54,587 nucleotides of DNA from Octopus sinensis (GCF_006345805.1 NW_021826282.1:1-54587); one strand, 5' to 3'; counted from the stretch's first letter, positions 385-53,745 are shown. Program-made: numbers and translations. Notes: generated by a model from the sequence alone, not told the origin.

Positions 385-513
385 GTTTTAGTTATTAGAC
401 TGCGGCCATGTTGGGGCAGCGTCTTGAAAAATTTTAGTCGAACAGCAAGGTTCCGGACCCACCCCTAATGCCCAAGGTGTCACGCATTAGGAGTGGGTCC
501 GGAACCTTGCTGT
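385..513 (-). mobile_element. Internally deleted SINE family A with a fold-back duplication of its head
   Basis: Tail piece TTAGACTGCGGCCATGTTGGGGCAGCG...TTTTAGTCGAAC joined to head piece GCCCAAGGTGTCACGCA...CCGGAACC. Confidence 0.6.
442..513. repeat. Near-perfect hairpin: 30-bp stem, 12-nt loop
   Basis: ACAGCAAGGTTCCGGACCCACCCCTAATGC-CCAAGGTGTCAC-GCATTAGGAGTGGGTCCGGAACCTTGCTGT; one mismatch, 463C/492A. Confidence 0.95.
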
Positions 514-2398
514 CAGTTTCCTTTCTTCAGCACCTTCACCGTTCTCTAAGCCTTTTCGTATTGGCCGGTTACGTCAAAGAGGTCACTTTACCTGCAGATG
601 CTTAGTATGTGTCATGCTCTGTTTTTCTGTCTTACTTATAAGATTCGTTAACTAAATAATCGGCATTCATGATGACCCTATGAGATTCCCTCTGTTCCAG
701 GTATTTCATCTTCAAATTTTTGCTATATATATATATATATATATAATAATAATAAATATTAGGGAATAAATCCAAACTTACAGGGAAAAATCAGATTTAG
801 GATTGAATCCAATGTTATAGTAAAATATTATTTGATGACAGTAGCCAGGAACGATCGTAGTGGATATTAATTATATTTTTTAATAATTGTTAATATTTAA
901 ATAATATAATTTAATTTATGTATTGGATTAAGTCTTTCATTGTTTGATTTGGCCTAATAGTGGTTTTGTCTCTAATTTAATATAATATAATATATATATA
1001 TTATTATATAATATTATATATATATATATATATATATATATATATATAATATTAATATATATATATATTATATGTATGTATGTATACTTATATATGTATA
1101 TACCTTGGAATTTACAAAAAAAAAACGGAGCAAAAGACGAAAACGGGGTGTAAACTACAAACATATGTATTTATATATACATATATGTATATACATATAT
1201 ATATATGTACACACATACATATATACATATGTGTGAATATATATAACTATACACACACACACATATATATGTATGTGTTTATGTATGTGTATATATATAT
1301 ATTATTATATCTGTCTATCTACCATCTATCTATCTACATCTATATCTATGTATGTATGTATCTATCTATCTATATATCTATATATATATATATGTTTATA
1401 TATATATATATGTGTGTGTATATAGACAGACAGATAATAGATAGATAGATACAGAGAGAGATGTATCTTAAACGTGTGTGTGTGTGTGTGTGTGTGTGTC
1501 TGTGTCTGTGTGTTTGTGTGTTTCTTCTTGTAGACATATGATATTAGTTGAGGTCACTTATTACTCGGAGGCACAAATATTTAGCAATTCTAACCTACTT
1601 AAGATAAATTTATTTCCAGAGGATTAACATCGCCGCTGGGTTTCTTGTAAAGAAGGTTCTCATGAACGCCTGGGTACGTAATCGAGAGTCTGTGCGGATA
1701 TCTGTGCAGAATGATTCATCAACAGAAATAGCTGTCATCTGTAGAGAATCTGAGCATCACTCATATTTTCAACGTGTCTGTCTCTTCATCTAATACGATG
1801 CTAAAGATTTACAGGGGGATTAACGGCACCGCCTTGTGTTACGTCATATATAATTCCGGCCATATTAGGCAGAGCACCGTTGACCACGATCATTTAACTG
1901 CTGCTCATACAACACAGTGTTGTGAGGCACATCCTATGGAGTAATCCTAACTAGGCAGAGAAAGAATCGGAGTATATCTGCCGCAATGGGGTTCGGCATA
2001 CGTAGTGCCTTGTCAGGCTGTCTCTGGCATTTGTATCTGGGTTCAAGACTGATTTGACGCTATAAGACATCGAGGTGAATGGGTGAGAATGATAAACTAC
2101 CAATTCAACAATGACCACCACCACAACCACCACCAACACAACAACAACAACATCTCACGACTTCTACAACTGCTGCAGCTACTACTACTACTACTACTAC
2201 TACTACTACTACTACTACTACTACTGCTGCTGCCTCCACAAGCGTTGACACAGTCCGTCGTTCGCCTCTTCAATCCCGCACCAAAGTAAAGAAAAAAATG
2301 TGCTTAAATTAAATATTGTTGTTTGTTTATGTTTCGTGTCACGCAAAAGACTTTGCTTCAATTTTATTGCAGCAATCTTTAGGAGTGATACCGCTTAT

Positions 2399-2815
2399 CT
2401 TTTATCTTGTACTTGTTTCAGTCATTAGACTGAGGCCATGCTGGGGCAACGCCATGAAGTATATTTAGTCCAATGAATCGAGTCTCGTACCTTTTGCTAC
2501 TTATTTTATCGATCTATTTTACCGAACGACTAAGTTAACACTAAGTAAATACATTAACACTGGTTGTCAATCGGCGGTGGGGGACAAACACAAAAACAAA
2601 GTCACACCACACACGTACTCACATATACACATGTACTCACATATACACACGTACTCACATATACACACGCAAACACACACACATACATATAGATGCGACG
2701 AGCTTCTTTCAGTTTCTGTGGCTCAGTCTACTCACGAGTCTGGCAAGCTCGAAGCTATAACGGTTACCGAAGGTGCCACGCAGTGGGATTGAACCCGAAC
2801 CCATGTAGCTGGGAA
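2399..2815 (-). mobile_element. SINE family A, diverged copy
   Basis: Reverse complement of the family A tail (CTTGTTTCAGTCATTAGACTGAGGCCATGCTGGGG) and head (AAGGTGCCACGCAGTGGGATTGAACCC). Confidence 0.8.
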
Positions 2816-52432: not shown

Positions 52433-53193
52433 TTCATTCTTTTATTTGCTTTATTCATTTGATTGTGGCCATGCTGGAGCACAGCCTTTTAGTCGAACAA
52501 ATCGACCTCAGGACTTATTCTTTGTAAGCTTGGTACTTATTCTATCGGTCTCTTCTGCCGAACCGCTAGGTTACGGAGGCGTAAACACACCACCATCCGT
52601 TGTCAAGTAATGGTGGGGCACAAACACTCAACACACCACACACACCACCACACACACACACACAACACCACACACACACACACATATATACATTAATATG
52701 TATATATATATAATATATATACATATATATTATATTTAATACTATATATATAGGTTATAAAATGAGATAGGGGTTGAAAAATTCAACCCACCATGGGATA
52801 ACATATATCCAATATACTGCTAGATAGGTACCCAACAAACAATACATAGATGTTAAAAATTGCCAAGCAATTAGTTCATCTATTGTATTATATGGGCAAA
52901 GGTAATAATGCCTTTACTGATATGTAATGGTGTAATAAGTATTGATTGGGTATCATCTGATAGTTGATGTTTTATTGATTTAAGTATGTTTCTCCATTTT
53001 CTAATTTTGTAATATATATATATATTTATACATATATACGACGAGCTTCTTTCAATTTCCGTCTACCAAATCCACTGACAAGGCATTGGTCGGAACGAGG
53101 CCATAGCAGAAAACACTTGCCCAAGGTGCTACGCAGTGGTACTGAACACGGAACCATGTGGTTGGTAAGCAAGCTACTTACCACACAGCCACT
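52433..53193 (-). mobile_element. SINE family A interrupted by a ~300-bp AT-rich insertion in its internal (TA)n tract
   Basis: Tail half 52433-52690 and head half 53035-53193 (GACGAGCTTCTTTCAATTTCCGTCTACCAAATCC...CCACACAGCCACT) flank unrelated sequence at about 52750-53005 that is bounded by (TA)n. Confidence 0.8.
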
Positions 53194-53335
53194 TATTGAC
53201 ATACAATTCATGAGTAATACATACATGCATATATAAAATTTAGATTCAGATGTATATGGTACTTGAGTTGAGGACCAGAATTTAGTATGGTATTATCCAT
53301 ACAATTTCAAAGTAAGGTGATTAAAATCAAAATAA

Positions 53336-53745
53336 GCAACGAGGATATCTACAGGTAATGCAGTACGATCGTTTCATGCAACTCAAACGTGCAAGTGGCT
53401 GAGCACTCCCCAGACACATATACTCTTAACGTAGTTCCCACCAATATATATATATTGGTGCAGGTGTGGCTGTGTGAAGGCGCATGGATTAGTGGGTAGA
53501 GCATTCGGCTAAAGATCGTAAGGTCGTGAGTTCAATTCCCGGCCACGCGTTGTGTCCTTGAGCAAGACACTTTATTTCACGTTGCTCCAGTCCACTCAGC
53601 TGGCAAACATGAATAGTGCCTGTGCCACTCTGAATCTCCCCGGGAACTACGTTAAGAGTATATGTGTCTGTGGAGTGCTCAGCCACTTGCACGCCTGAGT
53701 TGCATGAAACAATCATACTGCATTACCTGTGGATATCCTCGTTGC
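53336..53745. repeat. Inverted repeat, 104-bp arms (53336-53439, 53642-53745)
   Basis: 6 mismatches in 104 positions, no indels. Confidence 0.95.
53478..53692 (+). mobile_element. tRNA-derived SINE family F, internally deleted and 3'-truncated
   Basis: AAGGCGCATGGATTAGTGGGTAGAGC (A box) ... GAGTTCAATTCCC (B box), then TTGTGTCCTTGAGCAAGACACTTTATTTCACGTTGCTCCAGTCCACTCAGC. Confidence 0.8.

What the first reader, a model, noticed from the sequence alone, without database searches (positions are those of the whole stretch)
442..53745. Recurrent retroelement-anchored inverted duplications: a candidate hairpin-generating process
Six local inverted duplications occur in 54.6 kb: 442-513, 16165-16375, 18340-18385/18995-19040, 41896-43192, 48948-49018 and 53336-53745. 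In five of the six, an arm or the turnaround lies in a SINE or LINE (A head, D body, Dong RT, B body, F body). Three have short palindromes at or beside a junction: AATACGGCGCCGTATT at 16138-16153, TGCAAATAA..TTATTTGCA at 18383-18408 and ACCAATATATATATATTGGT at 53440-53459. This suggests a recurring template-switch or fold-back mechanism during retrotransposition or repair in microsatellite-rich DNA. It would keep creating long dsRNA stems without needing two independent opposite-orientation insertions, and could feed the cephalopod editing or small-RNA machinery. The pattern is seen in the sequence; the mechanism and function are inference.
Basis: inference. Interest (0 to 1): 0.72.

Follow-up and report, generated by a model that had tools for sequence, protein, structure and literature searches.

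The report
Mixed local inverted repeats around retroelements
The six inverted repeats are real, but they are a mixed set of fold-back copying scars, one larger inverted duplication and ordinary repeat pairs, so this one window does not show a single new hairpin-making process.

Summary
All six inverted repeats (IRs) exist at the stated coordinates and are far beyond chance. The window holds about 12 local IR loci and about 8 local direct-repeat loci.

The six are heterogeneous:
- 16153-16387 is a 115-bp-arm hairpin made of the 3' end of SINE D. It sits inside one 263-bp insertion flanked by a 10-bp target-site duplication, which is the best case for fold-back copying during retrotransposition.
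- 53336-53745 and 18340-19040 are head-to-head, twin-priming-like arrangements.
- 442-513 and 48948-49018 are 30-34-bp short-loop hairpins that look like snap-back repair footprints.
- 41896-43192 duplicates 360 bp of non-SINE flank plus a SINE head, so it arose at the DNA level.

A seventh, unlisted palindrome of about 370 bp (31538-32355) is not built from a retroelement. A SINE inserted into it later.

Same-family repeats cluster in both orientations, and IR versus direct is not significantly different. Retroelement enrichment is weak and partly circular. The short-palindrome association is suggestive but post hoc.

No same-species sequence could be reached, so recurrence across the genome and any role in editing or small RNAs remain untested. 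Known mechanisms suffice: twin priming, snap-back end joining and fold-back duplication.

The parts
442..513 (.). Short-loop hairpin with arms 442-471 and 484-513 and a 12-nt loop. It sits inside a minus-sense SINE-A copy whose body of about 300 bp is missing. The right arm plus loop is the A head piece and the left arm is its inverted copy.
   Evidence: 29/30; RNA MFE -56.7 kcal/mol, z = -11.
380..441 (-). 3' terminal part of the SINE-A copy that abuts the 442 hairpin.
   Evidence: 81% to 29796-29859; aligns to the A 3' end.
16112..16121 (+). Left copy of the 10-bp direct repeat AAACATCAAG, the candidate target-site duplication of the hairpin insertion.
   Evidence: P(null >= 10) about 0.004; the truncated 9-mer gives 0.011.
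16122..16153 (+). 32-nt filler between the TSD and the hairpin. It contains the perfect 16-bp palindrome AATACGGCGCCGTATT at 16138-16153.
16153..16387 (.). Long hairpin: arms about 16153-16266 and 16284-16387, 17-nt loop. Each arm is the 3'-terminal 110-115 nt of SINE D including its (TAA)n stretch. The 5' ends face each other. The arms share derived states that other D copies lack.
16385..16394 (+). Right copy of the 10-bp direct repeat AAACATCAAG.
18340..18385 (-). Inverted 46-bp copy of the LINE RT motif region (SWKAPGPDRVHGYWI). It abuts the 5'-truncated end of the LINE.
   Evidence: tblastn of L001 aa 430-446 on the minus strand at 18339-18389.
18383..18408 (.). Junction filler forming a 9-bp-stem, 8-nt-loop palindrome between the inverted piece and the first LINE homology at 18411.
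   Evidence: (z = -4.1).
18411..21100 (+). 5'-truncated, decayed non-LTR retrotransposon. It has an RVT_1 domain, and homology to relatives starts at their aa ~211. It is followed by an (AAT)n tail at 21176-21306. The right arm of the IR is 18995-19040.
41896..42341 (+). Left arm of the segmental inverted duplication: about 360 bp of non-repeat sequence plus the first ~80 bp of a SINE-B copy. The SINE-B copy spans about 42255-42440 and continues into the spacer.
42342..42768 (+). 427-bp spacer: the rest of SINE B plus about 330 bp of unique sequence.
42769..43192 (-). Right arm: inverted copy of the SINE-B head plus its upstream flank. It is truncated at the 3' side of the SINE.
   Evidence: 16 substitutions, 33 gap columns; the inner 133 bp are 132/133.
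48948..49018 (.). Near-perfect hairpin: 34-bp arms, 3-nt loop. No other copy in the window, no retroelement and no convincing TSD.
   Evidence: (z = -14).
53336..53439 (-). Inverted, 5'-truncated copy of the last 104 bp of SINE F. Its outer end coincides with the end of homology, where the direct copy's microsatellite tail begins.
53440..53459 (.). Junction between the two F copies: ACCA(AT)6TGGT. This is an (AT)n-based palindrome whose right end overlaps the first bases of SINE F.
   Evidence: (z = -1.0).
53457..53745 (+). Apparently full-length SINE-F copy with a B-box-like GAGTTCAATTCCCGG. It is followed by an (ATAC)/(AT)n tail. The right arm is 53642-53745.
31538..32355 (.). Not in the finding. 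One palindrome of about 370 bp: left arm 31538-31651 plus 32087-32144, 38-nt loop, right arm 32183-32355, 81.6% over 174 columns. A SINE-A insertion at 31652-32086 interrupts it. An 8-bp direct repeat TTTGATAT lies 3 nt outside each end.
38522..38872 (.). Not in the finding. 40-bp terminal inverted repeats (35/40) around a 271-bp spacer, in AT-rich sequence.
17040..18091 (.). Not in the finding. Three copies of an unnamed repeat 'G': 17040-17312 inverted, 17624-17888 and 17934-18091 direct. The first two are head to head (74.5% over 200 columns). The last ends in (ACT)n.
30730..32090 (.). Ordinary opposite-orientation SINE-A pair: 30730-30948 minus and 31655-32090 plus. The arms are no closer to each other than to other A copies.
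36693..37952 (.). Opposite-orientation SINE-B copies: 36693-36954 plus, 37340-37531 and 37822-37952 minus. The tails face each other.
46181..47218 (.). SINE-B minus copy (46181-46418), a 735-bp array of a 16-bp unit, then a 61-bp plus-strand SINE-B fragment (47158-47218). The arms are 85% identical, no closer than to other B copies.

Best explanation
The six IRs are real but come from different sources, each a known kind of event in very repeat- and microsatellite-rich DNA.

(a) Insertion-coupled fold-back or double priming.
- 16153-16387 is one 263-bp insertion flanked by a 10-bp target-site duplication. The 3'-terminal ~115 nt of a SINE-D copy is followed, across a 17-nt loop, by its own reverse complement. 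The likely route is inferred: the first-strand cDNA stopped early, snapped back on itself and was copied back to its start. The end was then joined to the target through 32 nt of filler.
- 53336-53745 has a full SINE F with an inverted copy of its last 104 nt placed 5' end to 5' end.
- 18340-19040 has a 46-bp inverted RT piece on the truncated 5' end of a LINE.
- These two are twin-priming-like products: both DNA ends of the target prime reverse transcription and the two cDNA ends are then joined. This too is inferred.

(b) Snap-back repair footprints. 442-513 (with loss of about 300 bp of SINE body) and 48948-49018 are 30-34-bp inverted copies with tiny loops. They have the form left by synthesis-dependent, microhomology-mediated end joining.

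(c) DNA-level fold-back or template-switch duplication. 41896-43192 copies 360 bp of flank plus a SINE head, so it happened after the SINE had inserted.

Other IRs in the window are independent opposite-orientation SINE pairs and palindromic elements unrelated to retroelements.

Nothing here shows a dedicated process or a function.
For: - The anatomy of each IR is.
- The 10-bp direct repeat AAACATCAAG brackets 16122-16384. The null probability of a 10-mer is about 0.004.
- The arms of 16153 share a GGTA insertion and 5 substitutions that three other D copies lack.
- The LINE is 5'-truncated at about 18411, and the inverted motif piece lies directly upstream.
- The 41896 arms include non-repeat flank and are 132/133 identical over a B piece, against about 75% family background.
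- Two head-to-head SINE pairs have gaps of 17-18 nt, where 0.14 are expected (P about 0.01).
- The 5' ends face each other in 7 of 9 oriented IR loci.
- Junction palindromes touch 3 of 18 boundaries where 0.3 are expected.
- A 33/33 hairpin of the same type lies inside the homologous LINE ORF of another animal (L082).
- Snap-back and fold-back insertions at breaks are documented in PMC2943611, PMC5728401 and PMC11724301. Twin priming is documented in PMC2837659 and PMC2912911.
Against: - No second copy of any of these structures and no empty site could be examined, so every mechanism is inferred from one allele.
- The TSD of 16153 is one 10-mer found among 9 loci tested. After correction for nine tests P is 0.04-0.1.
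- The 46-bp RT motif is conserved across species (74-79% to L001 and L002, against 87-90% between the arms). The piece at 18340 could be the remnant of a separate LINE copy.
- SINE F has no other copy in the window, so the 94% arm identity cannot be compared with a family background.
- The 7:2 orientation bias is not significant (one-sided P about 0.09).
- The palindrome association is post hoc, and one of the three palindromes is an (AT)7 tract. With two palindromes P is about 0.04.
- Arms of 115 bp are well above the 5-34 bp typical of templated inverted insertions.
Confidence: 0.5

Rival explanations
1. Independent insertions. The IRs are chance juxtapositions of separately inserted, oppositely oriented SINE or LINE copies, favoured by shared microsatellite target sites.
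For: - Their arms are no closer to each other than to other copies.
- Same-family copies cluster within 1 kb in both orientations: 11 inverted and 6 direct pairs, against 2.7 expected for each.
- In 53336-53745, both F copies end at the same element terminus with different tails, as two separate retrotranspositions would.
- The RT motif at 18340 is conserved enough to be a relic of another copy.
Against: - It cannot explain 41896-43192, where flank is duplicated.
- It cannot explain 442 or 48948, which have 30-34-bp arms and 3-12-nt loops.
- It cannot explain the symmetric truncation, 17-nt loop and single TSD of 16153-16387.
- Two same-family copies 17-18 nt apart head to head are expected 0.14 times and seen twice.
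- F occurs nowhere else in 54.6 kb.
Confidence: 0.15
2. Mobile palindromic elements. The hairpins are copies of MITE-like or foldback DNA transposons, or of hairpin-shaped SINE variants that transpose as units. Each IR would then be inherited from a master copy and not made on the spot.
For: - 31538-32355 is a ~370-bp palindrome with an 8-bp direct repeat 3 nt outside both ends (P = 0.03). It predates a SINE insertion.
- 38522-38872 has 40-bp terminal IRs.
- The 16153 unit has a TSD, which any transposed unit would have.
- Palindromic repeats are the stated source of local dsRNA in frog (PMC5625713).
- A comparator locus holds a TTAA-CCC...GGG-TTAA hairpin that looks like a piggyBac-type MITE (L084).
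Against: - None of the hairpins has a second copy in the window.
- The IR of the 16153 unit does not reach the left end of the insertion; 32 nt of filler intervene.
- 442 is embedded in a recognisable SINE-A copy with head and tail in the right order.
- 41896 contains a partial SINE and has no TSD.
Confidence: 0.2
3. One recurrent, retroelement-anchored hairpin-generating process, nucleated at micro-palindromes, supplies dsRNA substrates for editing or small-RNA pathways in this lineage.
For: - Local IR density is 2.7 per 10 kb of unmasked sequence, against 0.7 in 97 kb of comparator loci from other animals.
- Short palindromes touch 3 of 6 IRs (permutation P about 4e-4).
- Arm divergence runs from 3% to about 25%, so events span a long time.
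- Octopus is reported to have an exceptionally high fraction of loci able to form long, near-perfect dsRNA (PMC5625713).
Against: - Direct repeats are also enriched: 1.9 against 0.8 per 10 kb.
- The IR:DR ratio is not skewed.
- The anatomies are incompatible with one mechanism. 41896 is 3'-truncated with flank, and 31538 is not retroelement-derived.
- The same hairpin type occurs in another animal.
- There are no transcription, editing or small-RNA data.
- The organism is unverified.
Confidence: 0.12
4. Assembly or sequencing artefact. Chimeric fold-back reads would have created false inverted duplications.
For: 442 and 48948 are nearly perfect, with one mismatch each. The comparator hairpin in L082 is 33/33.
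Against: Arms differ by 3-25% and carry indels. The structures are 70-1300 bp and lie inside ordinary sequence, not at kb-scale read ends. One has a TSD and one has a later SINE insertion.
Confidence: 0.03

Closest known systems
Twin priming, i.e. 5'-inverted LINE-1 insertions (Ostertag and Kazazian model; discussed in PMC2837659 and PMC2912911)
   Same: An inverted piece of the same element abuts the 5'-truncated direct copy, with the 5' ends facing and filler or microhomology at the junction (18340-19040, 53336-53745). The composite behaves as one insertion (TSD at 16112/16385).
   Different: - The inverted piece duplicates sequence that the direct copy also contains; it does not replace upstream sequence.
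- In 53336 and 16153 the inverted copy starts at the element's 3' terminus, not at an internal priming site.
- The elements are SINEs and a microsatellite-tailed LINE, not L1.
Snap-back synthesis in synthesis-dependent MMEJ or polymerase-theta end joining, and fold-back templated inverted insertions at breaks (PMC2943611, PMC5728401, PMC11724301)
   Same: An inverted copy of the immediately adjacent sequence with a very short loop, accompanied by a deletion (442-513 with loss of the SINE body; 48948-49018). Small palindromic fillers occur at junctions (18383-18408, 16138-16153).
   Different: Reported insertions are mostly 5-34 bp. The arms here are 30-34 bp at the small end and about 115 bp at 16153. 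No break site or enzyme dependence can be shown.
Fold-back or template-switch inverted duplications with a spacer (replication-based rearrangements, reviewed in PMC9199198)
   Same: 41896-43192 has two 445-bp arms in inverted orientation around a 427-bp unique spacer. The arms include unique flank, and one breakpoint lies inside a pre-existing repeat.
   Different: It is very small compared with the kb-to-Mb events described in disease and cancer genomes. Only a 4-bp CCGA repeat lies at the inner junction, which is not informative.
Inverted SINE pairs and palindromic repeats as ADAR substrates (PMC5625713, PMC3458544)
   Same: Several IR loci in the window are plain opposite-orientation SINE pairs. 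31538-32355 is a palindromic element of the kind invoked for frog.
   Different: No expression or editing evidence exists for this window. Several IRs are single-event duplications, not pairs of independent copies.

Membership tests
Twin-priming-type 5'-inverted retrotransposon insertion | Inverted and direct segments of one element lie with their 5' ends adjacent. | tested here: met
   Met for 16153-16387, 18340-19040 and 53336-53745.
Twin-priming-type 5'-inverted retrotransposon insertion | One target-site duplication flanks the whole composite. | tested here: inconclusive
   A 10-bp repeat flanks the 16153 unit (P 0.004-0.011 before correction). None was found for 18340 or 53336, whose flanks are microsatellite.
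Twin-priming-type 5'-inverted retrotransposon insertion | The inverted segment comes from RNA upstream of the direct segment's 5' end, with at most a small overlap. | tested here: not met
   In all three cases the inverted piece lies wholly within the part also present in direct orientation.
Twin-priming-type 5'-inverted retrotransposon insertion | The outer end of the inverted segment is an internal priming site, and only the direct segment carries the 3' tail. | tested here: not met
   Met only for 18340. Both arms of 16153 carry the (TAA)n stretch and the element terminus. The 53336 arm ends at the element terminus.
Snap-back (SD-MMEJ / TMEJ) templated inverted insertion | An inverted copy of directly adjacent sequence with a short loop. 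| tested here: met
   442-513 has a 12-nt loop, 48948-49018 a 3-nt loop and 16153-16387 a 17-nt loop.
Snap-back (SD-MMEJ / TMEJ) templated inverted insertion | A deletion at the same junction. | tested here: inconclusive
   442 shows it: the ~300-bp SINE-A body is missing between head and tail. For 48948 there is no reference for the pre-event sequence.
Snap-back (SD-MMEJ / TMEJ) templated inverted insertion | Dependence on polymerase theta or an alt-EJ pathway. | not testable with these tools
   This needs genetics.
Palindromic MITE / foldback DNA transposon | Terminal inverted repeats at the very ends, flanked by a fixed-length TSD. | tested here: inconclusive
   31538-32355 has the 8-bp repeat TTTGATAT 3 nt outside both ends (P = 0.03). 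48948, 41896 and 38522 have none. In the 16153 unit the IR does not reach the left end of the insertion.
Palindromic MITE / foldback DNA transposon | Many dispersed copies in the genome. | not testable with these tools
   No second copy exists in the window. No same-species sequence was reachable.
Independent opposite-orientation SINE pair | The arms are confined to the element and no more alike than random family members. | tested here: not met
   Not met for 41896 (flank included; 132/133 against about 75%) or for 442. Met for the unlisted pairs at 30730/31655, 36693/37340 and 46181/47158. Untestable for 53336, the only F copies.
   RVT_1 is present and an (AAT)n tail lies at 21176. A CCHC...KPDIV-type C-terminal region is seen in the window and in relatives. 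It gave no PDB match, and no reference Dong sequence was compared.

The most novel reading that the evidence does not exclude
In this genome, target-primed reverse transcription of SINEs and LINEs often ends in cDNA snap-back or second-end priming. That would create head-to-head hairpin insertions, whose arms start at the element's 3' terminus, as single events. Such a process could be a main source of the unusually high density of near-perfect local dsRNA-forming loci reported for octopus, and so of ADAR hyper-editing substrates.
Probability: 0.15. Interest if true: 0.65.

Novelty: new variant of a known kind. Interest (0 to 1): 0.38.

Why it matters
Local inverted repeats are the main source of long dsRNA and hence of ADAR hyper-editing. 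Octopus has been reported to have an exceptionally high fraction of such loci, without an explanation of where they come from (PMC5625713).

If a sizeable share arise in one step during retrotransposition or break repair, repeat content alone would not predict dsRNA load. The retroelement machinery or the repair pathway would then be a lever on the editing landscape.

This window offers one good example, the TSD-bounded SINE-D hairpin, and several compatible ones. That is enough to define a searchable signature but not to establish a process.

Tried and rejected
Attempts to reach same-species sequence all failed:
- The LINE RT ORF has no relative above 61% identity in the protein collection.
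- The ORF itself is not on record.
- The closest contigs (L001-L003) share no SINE with the window.
- An 18-mer of SINE B scanned against metagenome contigs gave 77 loci. None shares any similarity with the window and nearly all have above 42% GC, so they were taken to be chance matches in unrelated microbial DNA.
- A SINE-B peptide found one 543-bp contig.

RNA family searches:
- Rfam at gathering thresholds gave nothing.
- At E <= 1 the top-scoring hits were all sub-threshold, microsatellite-type miRNA families plus a meaningless mir-5727 hit on 48948.
- No tRNA signal was found on the F or B regions searched.

Other checks that led nowhere:
- The C-terminal LINE domain gave no PDB match.
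- The mismatch spectra between arms are ordinary and transition-rich, with no A-to-G bias that would suggest edited RNA intermediates.
- Fillers and loops have no informative matches elsewhere in the window.

Rejected ideas:
- One mechanism for all six IRs, because the anatomies conflict.
- Assembly artefact as a general explanation, because the arms have diverged.
- The 53440 palindrome as strong evidence, because it is an (AT)7 tract.

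
Full report
OBSERVATION

All six inverted repeats (IRs) are present at the stated coordinates.
- 442-471/484-513: 29/30, 12-nt loop.
- 16153-16387: folds as RNA into one hairpin of about 110 pairs with a 17-nt loop (z = -18).
- 18340-18380/19000-19040: 37/41.
- 41896-42340/42769-43192: 451 columns at 89% with indels; the inner 133 bp are 132/133.
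- 48948-48981/48985-49018: 33/34.
- 53336-53439/53642-53745: 98/104.

The hairpins at 442 and 48948 have z = -11 and -14 against dinucleotide shuffles. A reverse-only 'mirror' control finds no pairs in the masked window. None of the six is a chance match.

HOW COMPLETE THE LIST IS

One third of the window is microsatellite or low complexity. Outside that, self-BLAST and a seed-extension scan give about 12 local IR loci and about 8 local direct-repeat loci.

The most instructive omission is a palindrome of about 370 bp. When the SINE-A copy at 31652-32086 is removed in silico, 31538-31651 plus 32087-32144 aligns without a break to the reverse complement of 32183-32355 (174 columns, 81.6%, 38-nt loop). 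An 8-bp repeat, TTTGATAT, lies 3 nt outside each end (P = 0.03). This IR is not built from a retroelement; the SINE arrived later.

Other unlisted IRs:
- 38522-38872 (40-bp terminal IRs).
- A head-to-head pair of an unnamed repeat at 17040-17312/17624-17888.
- Plain opposite-orientation SINE pairs at 26908/27826, 30730/31655, 36693/37340 and 46181/47158.

ANATOMY OF THE SIX

442-513
- The site is a minus-sense SINE-A copy.
- Read in the SINE's sense, it has a 5'-truncated head piece, a 28-30-nt inverted copy of that piece, then the last ~65 nt of the element.
- The ~300-bp body is missing.
- The arms are 97% identical, while this copy is about 80% identical to other A copies. The inversion is therefore a local event that came with a deletion.

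16153-16387
- Each arm is the 3'-terminal 110-115 nt of SINE D, with the 5' ends facing.
- The arms share a GGTA insertion, small indels and five substitutions that three other D copies lack.
- A 10-bp direct repeat, AAACATCAAG, lies at 16112-16121 and 16385-16394. A repeat that long occurs in about 0.4% of random flank pairs. Nine loci were tested.
- Between the left repeat and the hairpin lie 32 nt of filler containing the perfect palindrome AATACGGCGCCGTATT.
- The simplest reading is a single insertion of 263 bp whose content is a snapped-back 3' SINE fragment.

18340-19040
- The plus-strand LINE has an RVT_1 domain.
- It matches relatives from other animals only from their residue ~211 onward, starting at 18411. 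It is therefore 5'-truncated.
- Directly upstream on the other strand lies a 46-51-bp copy of the motif NWKAPGPDG..GYWIK.
- A filler forming a 9-bp stem sits between them (18383-18408, z = -4.1).
- This 46-bp motif is 74-79% identical even to LINEs of other species, against 87-90% between the arms. A relic of a second LINE copy cannot be excluded.

41896-43192
- Each arm is about 360 bp that matches nothing else in the window, plus the first ~80 bp of a SINE-B copy.
- The direct B copy continues about 100 bp into the 427-bp spacer.
- The inverted copy therefore holds the SINE's 5' part and its upstream flank. A reverse-transcription product cannot have that content.
- This is a DNA-level inverted duplication made after the SINE inserted. 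No TSD was found.

48948-49018
- A 34-bp-arm hairpin with a 3-nt loop, one mismatch, no retroelement, no second copy and no convincing TSD.

53336-53745
- An apparently full-length SINE F (53457-53745, followed by an ATAC/AT tail) is preceded by an inverted copy of its last 104 nt, with the 5' ends facing.
- The two copies are separated by ACCA(AT)6TGGT.
- Homology ends at the same base in both copies, with unrelated sequence beyond it.
- F occurs nowhere else in the window, so no family background is available.

STATISTICS

Retroelement enrichment
- SINE families A, B, D and F plus the LINE cover 18% of the window.
- Random placement gives P = 0.017 for 5 of 6 IRs overlapping them and 0.10 for 4 of 6.
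- BLAST annotation catches only 1 bp of 442.
- The test is circular wherever the arms are themselves the SINE copies.
- Adding the unlisted non-retroelement IRs weakens it further.

Clustering and orientation
- Same-family copies within 1 kb are more frequent than uniform random placement predicts in both orientations: 11 inverted pairs against 2.7 expected (P = 0.0002) and 6 direct pairs against 2.7 (P = 0.055).
- Counted as loci this is 8 against 5.
- The window therefore shows repeat clustering, not a specific inverted excess.
- The inverted class does stand out at the tight end. Two head-to-head SINE pairs have gaps of 17-18 nt where 0.14 are expected (P about 0.01). Three further short-loop hairpins add to this.
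- The 5' ends face each other in 7 of 9 oriented IR loci. This fits insertion-coupled formation but is not significant.

Short palindromes
- Only 14 palindromes with stem >= 8 and loop <= 8 lie outside the mask. Three of them touch boundaries of the six IRs.
- Rigid-shift permutation gives P about 4e-4.
- The test is post hoc. One of the three is an (AT)7 tract with no folding excess. With two palindromes the figure is about 0.04.

Comparator loci
- Five 21-kb loci around related LINEs in other animals were scanned.
- They hold 7 IR and 8 direct-repeat loci in 97 kb of unmasked sequence. The window holds 10 and 7 in 36.5 kb.
- The window is denser in both classes.
- One comparator hairpin (L082 9217-9285, 33/33, 3-nt loop) is an inverted duplication of the codons for 'MEKNEPRWKRRIE' inside the homologous LINE ORF. 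The same kind of scar therefore occurs elsewhere.

MECHANISM

The evidence fits a mixture of known processes.
- 16153 is best read as fold-back of a short first-strand cDNA during target-primed reverse transcription. This is inferred from the TSD, from both arms reaching the element terminus, from the symmetric truncation and from the filler.
- 53336 and 18340 resemble twin priming. They fail two of its defining features: the inverted part duplicates the direct copy's sequence, and in 53336 priming is at the terminus.
- 442 and 48948 have the form of snap-back templated insertions of alternative end joining (PMC2943611, PMC5728401, PMC11724301). They lie at the upper end of the reported size range.
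- 41896 is a fold-back or template-switch duplication.
- Independent insertion and palindromic mobile elements explain the remaining IRs in the window. They remain live alternatives for 53336, 18340, 48948 and the 16153 unit.

LIMITS

- No sequence from the same species could be reached.
- Copy number, family consensus, empty sites, independent assemblies and genome-wide rates are therefore all untested.
- The organism is unverified.
- Rfam and ARAGORN do not confirm tRNA-derived heads.
- Nothing bears on transcription, editing or small RNAs.
- The one relevant published fact is that octopus has an unusually high fraction of loci able to form long, near-perfect dsRNA (PMC5625713). That makes the origin of such IRs a fair question.

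VERDICT

It is real and non-random, but the list is selective.
Fold-back events exist here, and one is probably coupled to insertion. A single recurrent retroelement-anchored process is not shown, nor is any function.
- Novelty is modest: variants of known junction and repair products. The searchable signature worth a genome-wide test is a TSD-bounded hairpin whose arms start at the SINE 3' terminus.

Noticed in passing
window 31538-32355: A ~370-bp palindrome (arms ~172 bp, 81.6% identical, 38-nt loop) is interrupted by a later SINE-A insertion at 31652-32086. An 8-bp repeat TTTGATAT lies just outside both ends, which is compatible with a hAT-type palindromic MITE.
   Followed up: yes
L082 9217-9285: In another animal's copy of the related LINE, a perfect 33-bp-arm hairpin with a 3-nt loop is an inverted duplication of ORF sequence (codons for MEKNEPRWKRRIE), at the position homologous to the region upstream of the RT.
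   Followed up: partly
window 46420-47154: A 735-bp tandem array of a 16-bp unit (ACACCTCCACCACACT, with higher-order periods of 62 and 156) lies exactly between a minus-strand SINE-B copy and a 61-bp plus-strand SINE-B fragment.
   Followed up: partly
window 44000-48000: Extreme strand asymmetry (GC skew -0.77 and -0.65): a long polypyrimidine-rich stretch with (TCTT)n, (TATC)n, (CT)n and the C-rich array.
   Followed up: no
window 7562-7931: A head-to-tail dimer of SINE B (184-bp period, 86.6% identical). The two units are closer to each other than to other B copies.
   Followed up: no
window 26318-26873 and 33468-34026: A 560-bp direct repeat, 83% identical and 6.6 kb apart. Each copy ends in a trinucleotide microsatellite, (GTA)n and (TAA)n. 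It is probably the 3' fragment of another microsatellite-tailed retroelement, and it does not match the LINE at 18411.
   Followed up: no
window 5283-6473: A 1.2-kb (ATAC)n tract. Overall 33% of the window is microsatellite or low complexity, including many (AT)n tracts of 100-350 bp, which are themselves self-complementary.
   Followed up: partly
window 17040-18225: Three copies of an uncharacterised repeat within 1 kb, one inverted and two direct. The last copy runs into a 130-bp (ACT)n tract that abuts the inverted LINE fragment at 18340.
   Followed up: partly
L084 15093-15209: A 57-bp-arm hairpin bounded by TTAACCC...GGGTTAA in another animal's genome. It looks like a piggyBac-type palindromic MITE.
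   Followed up: no
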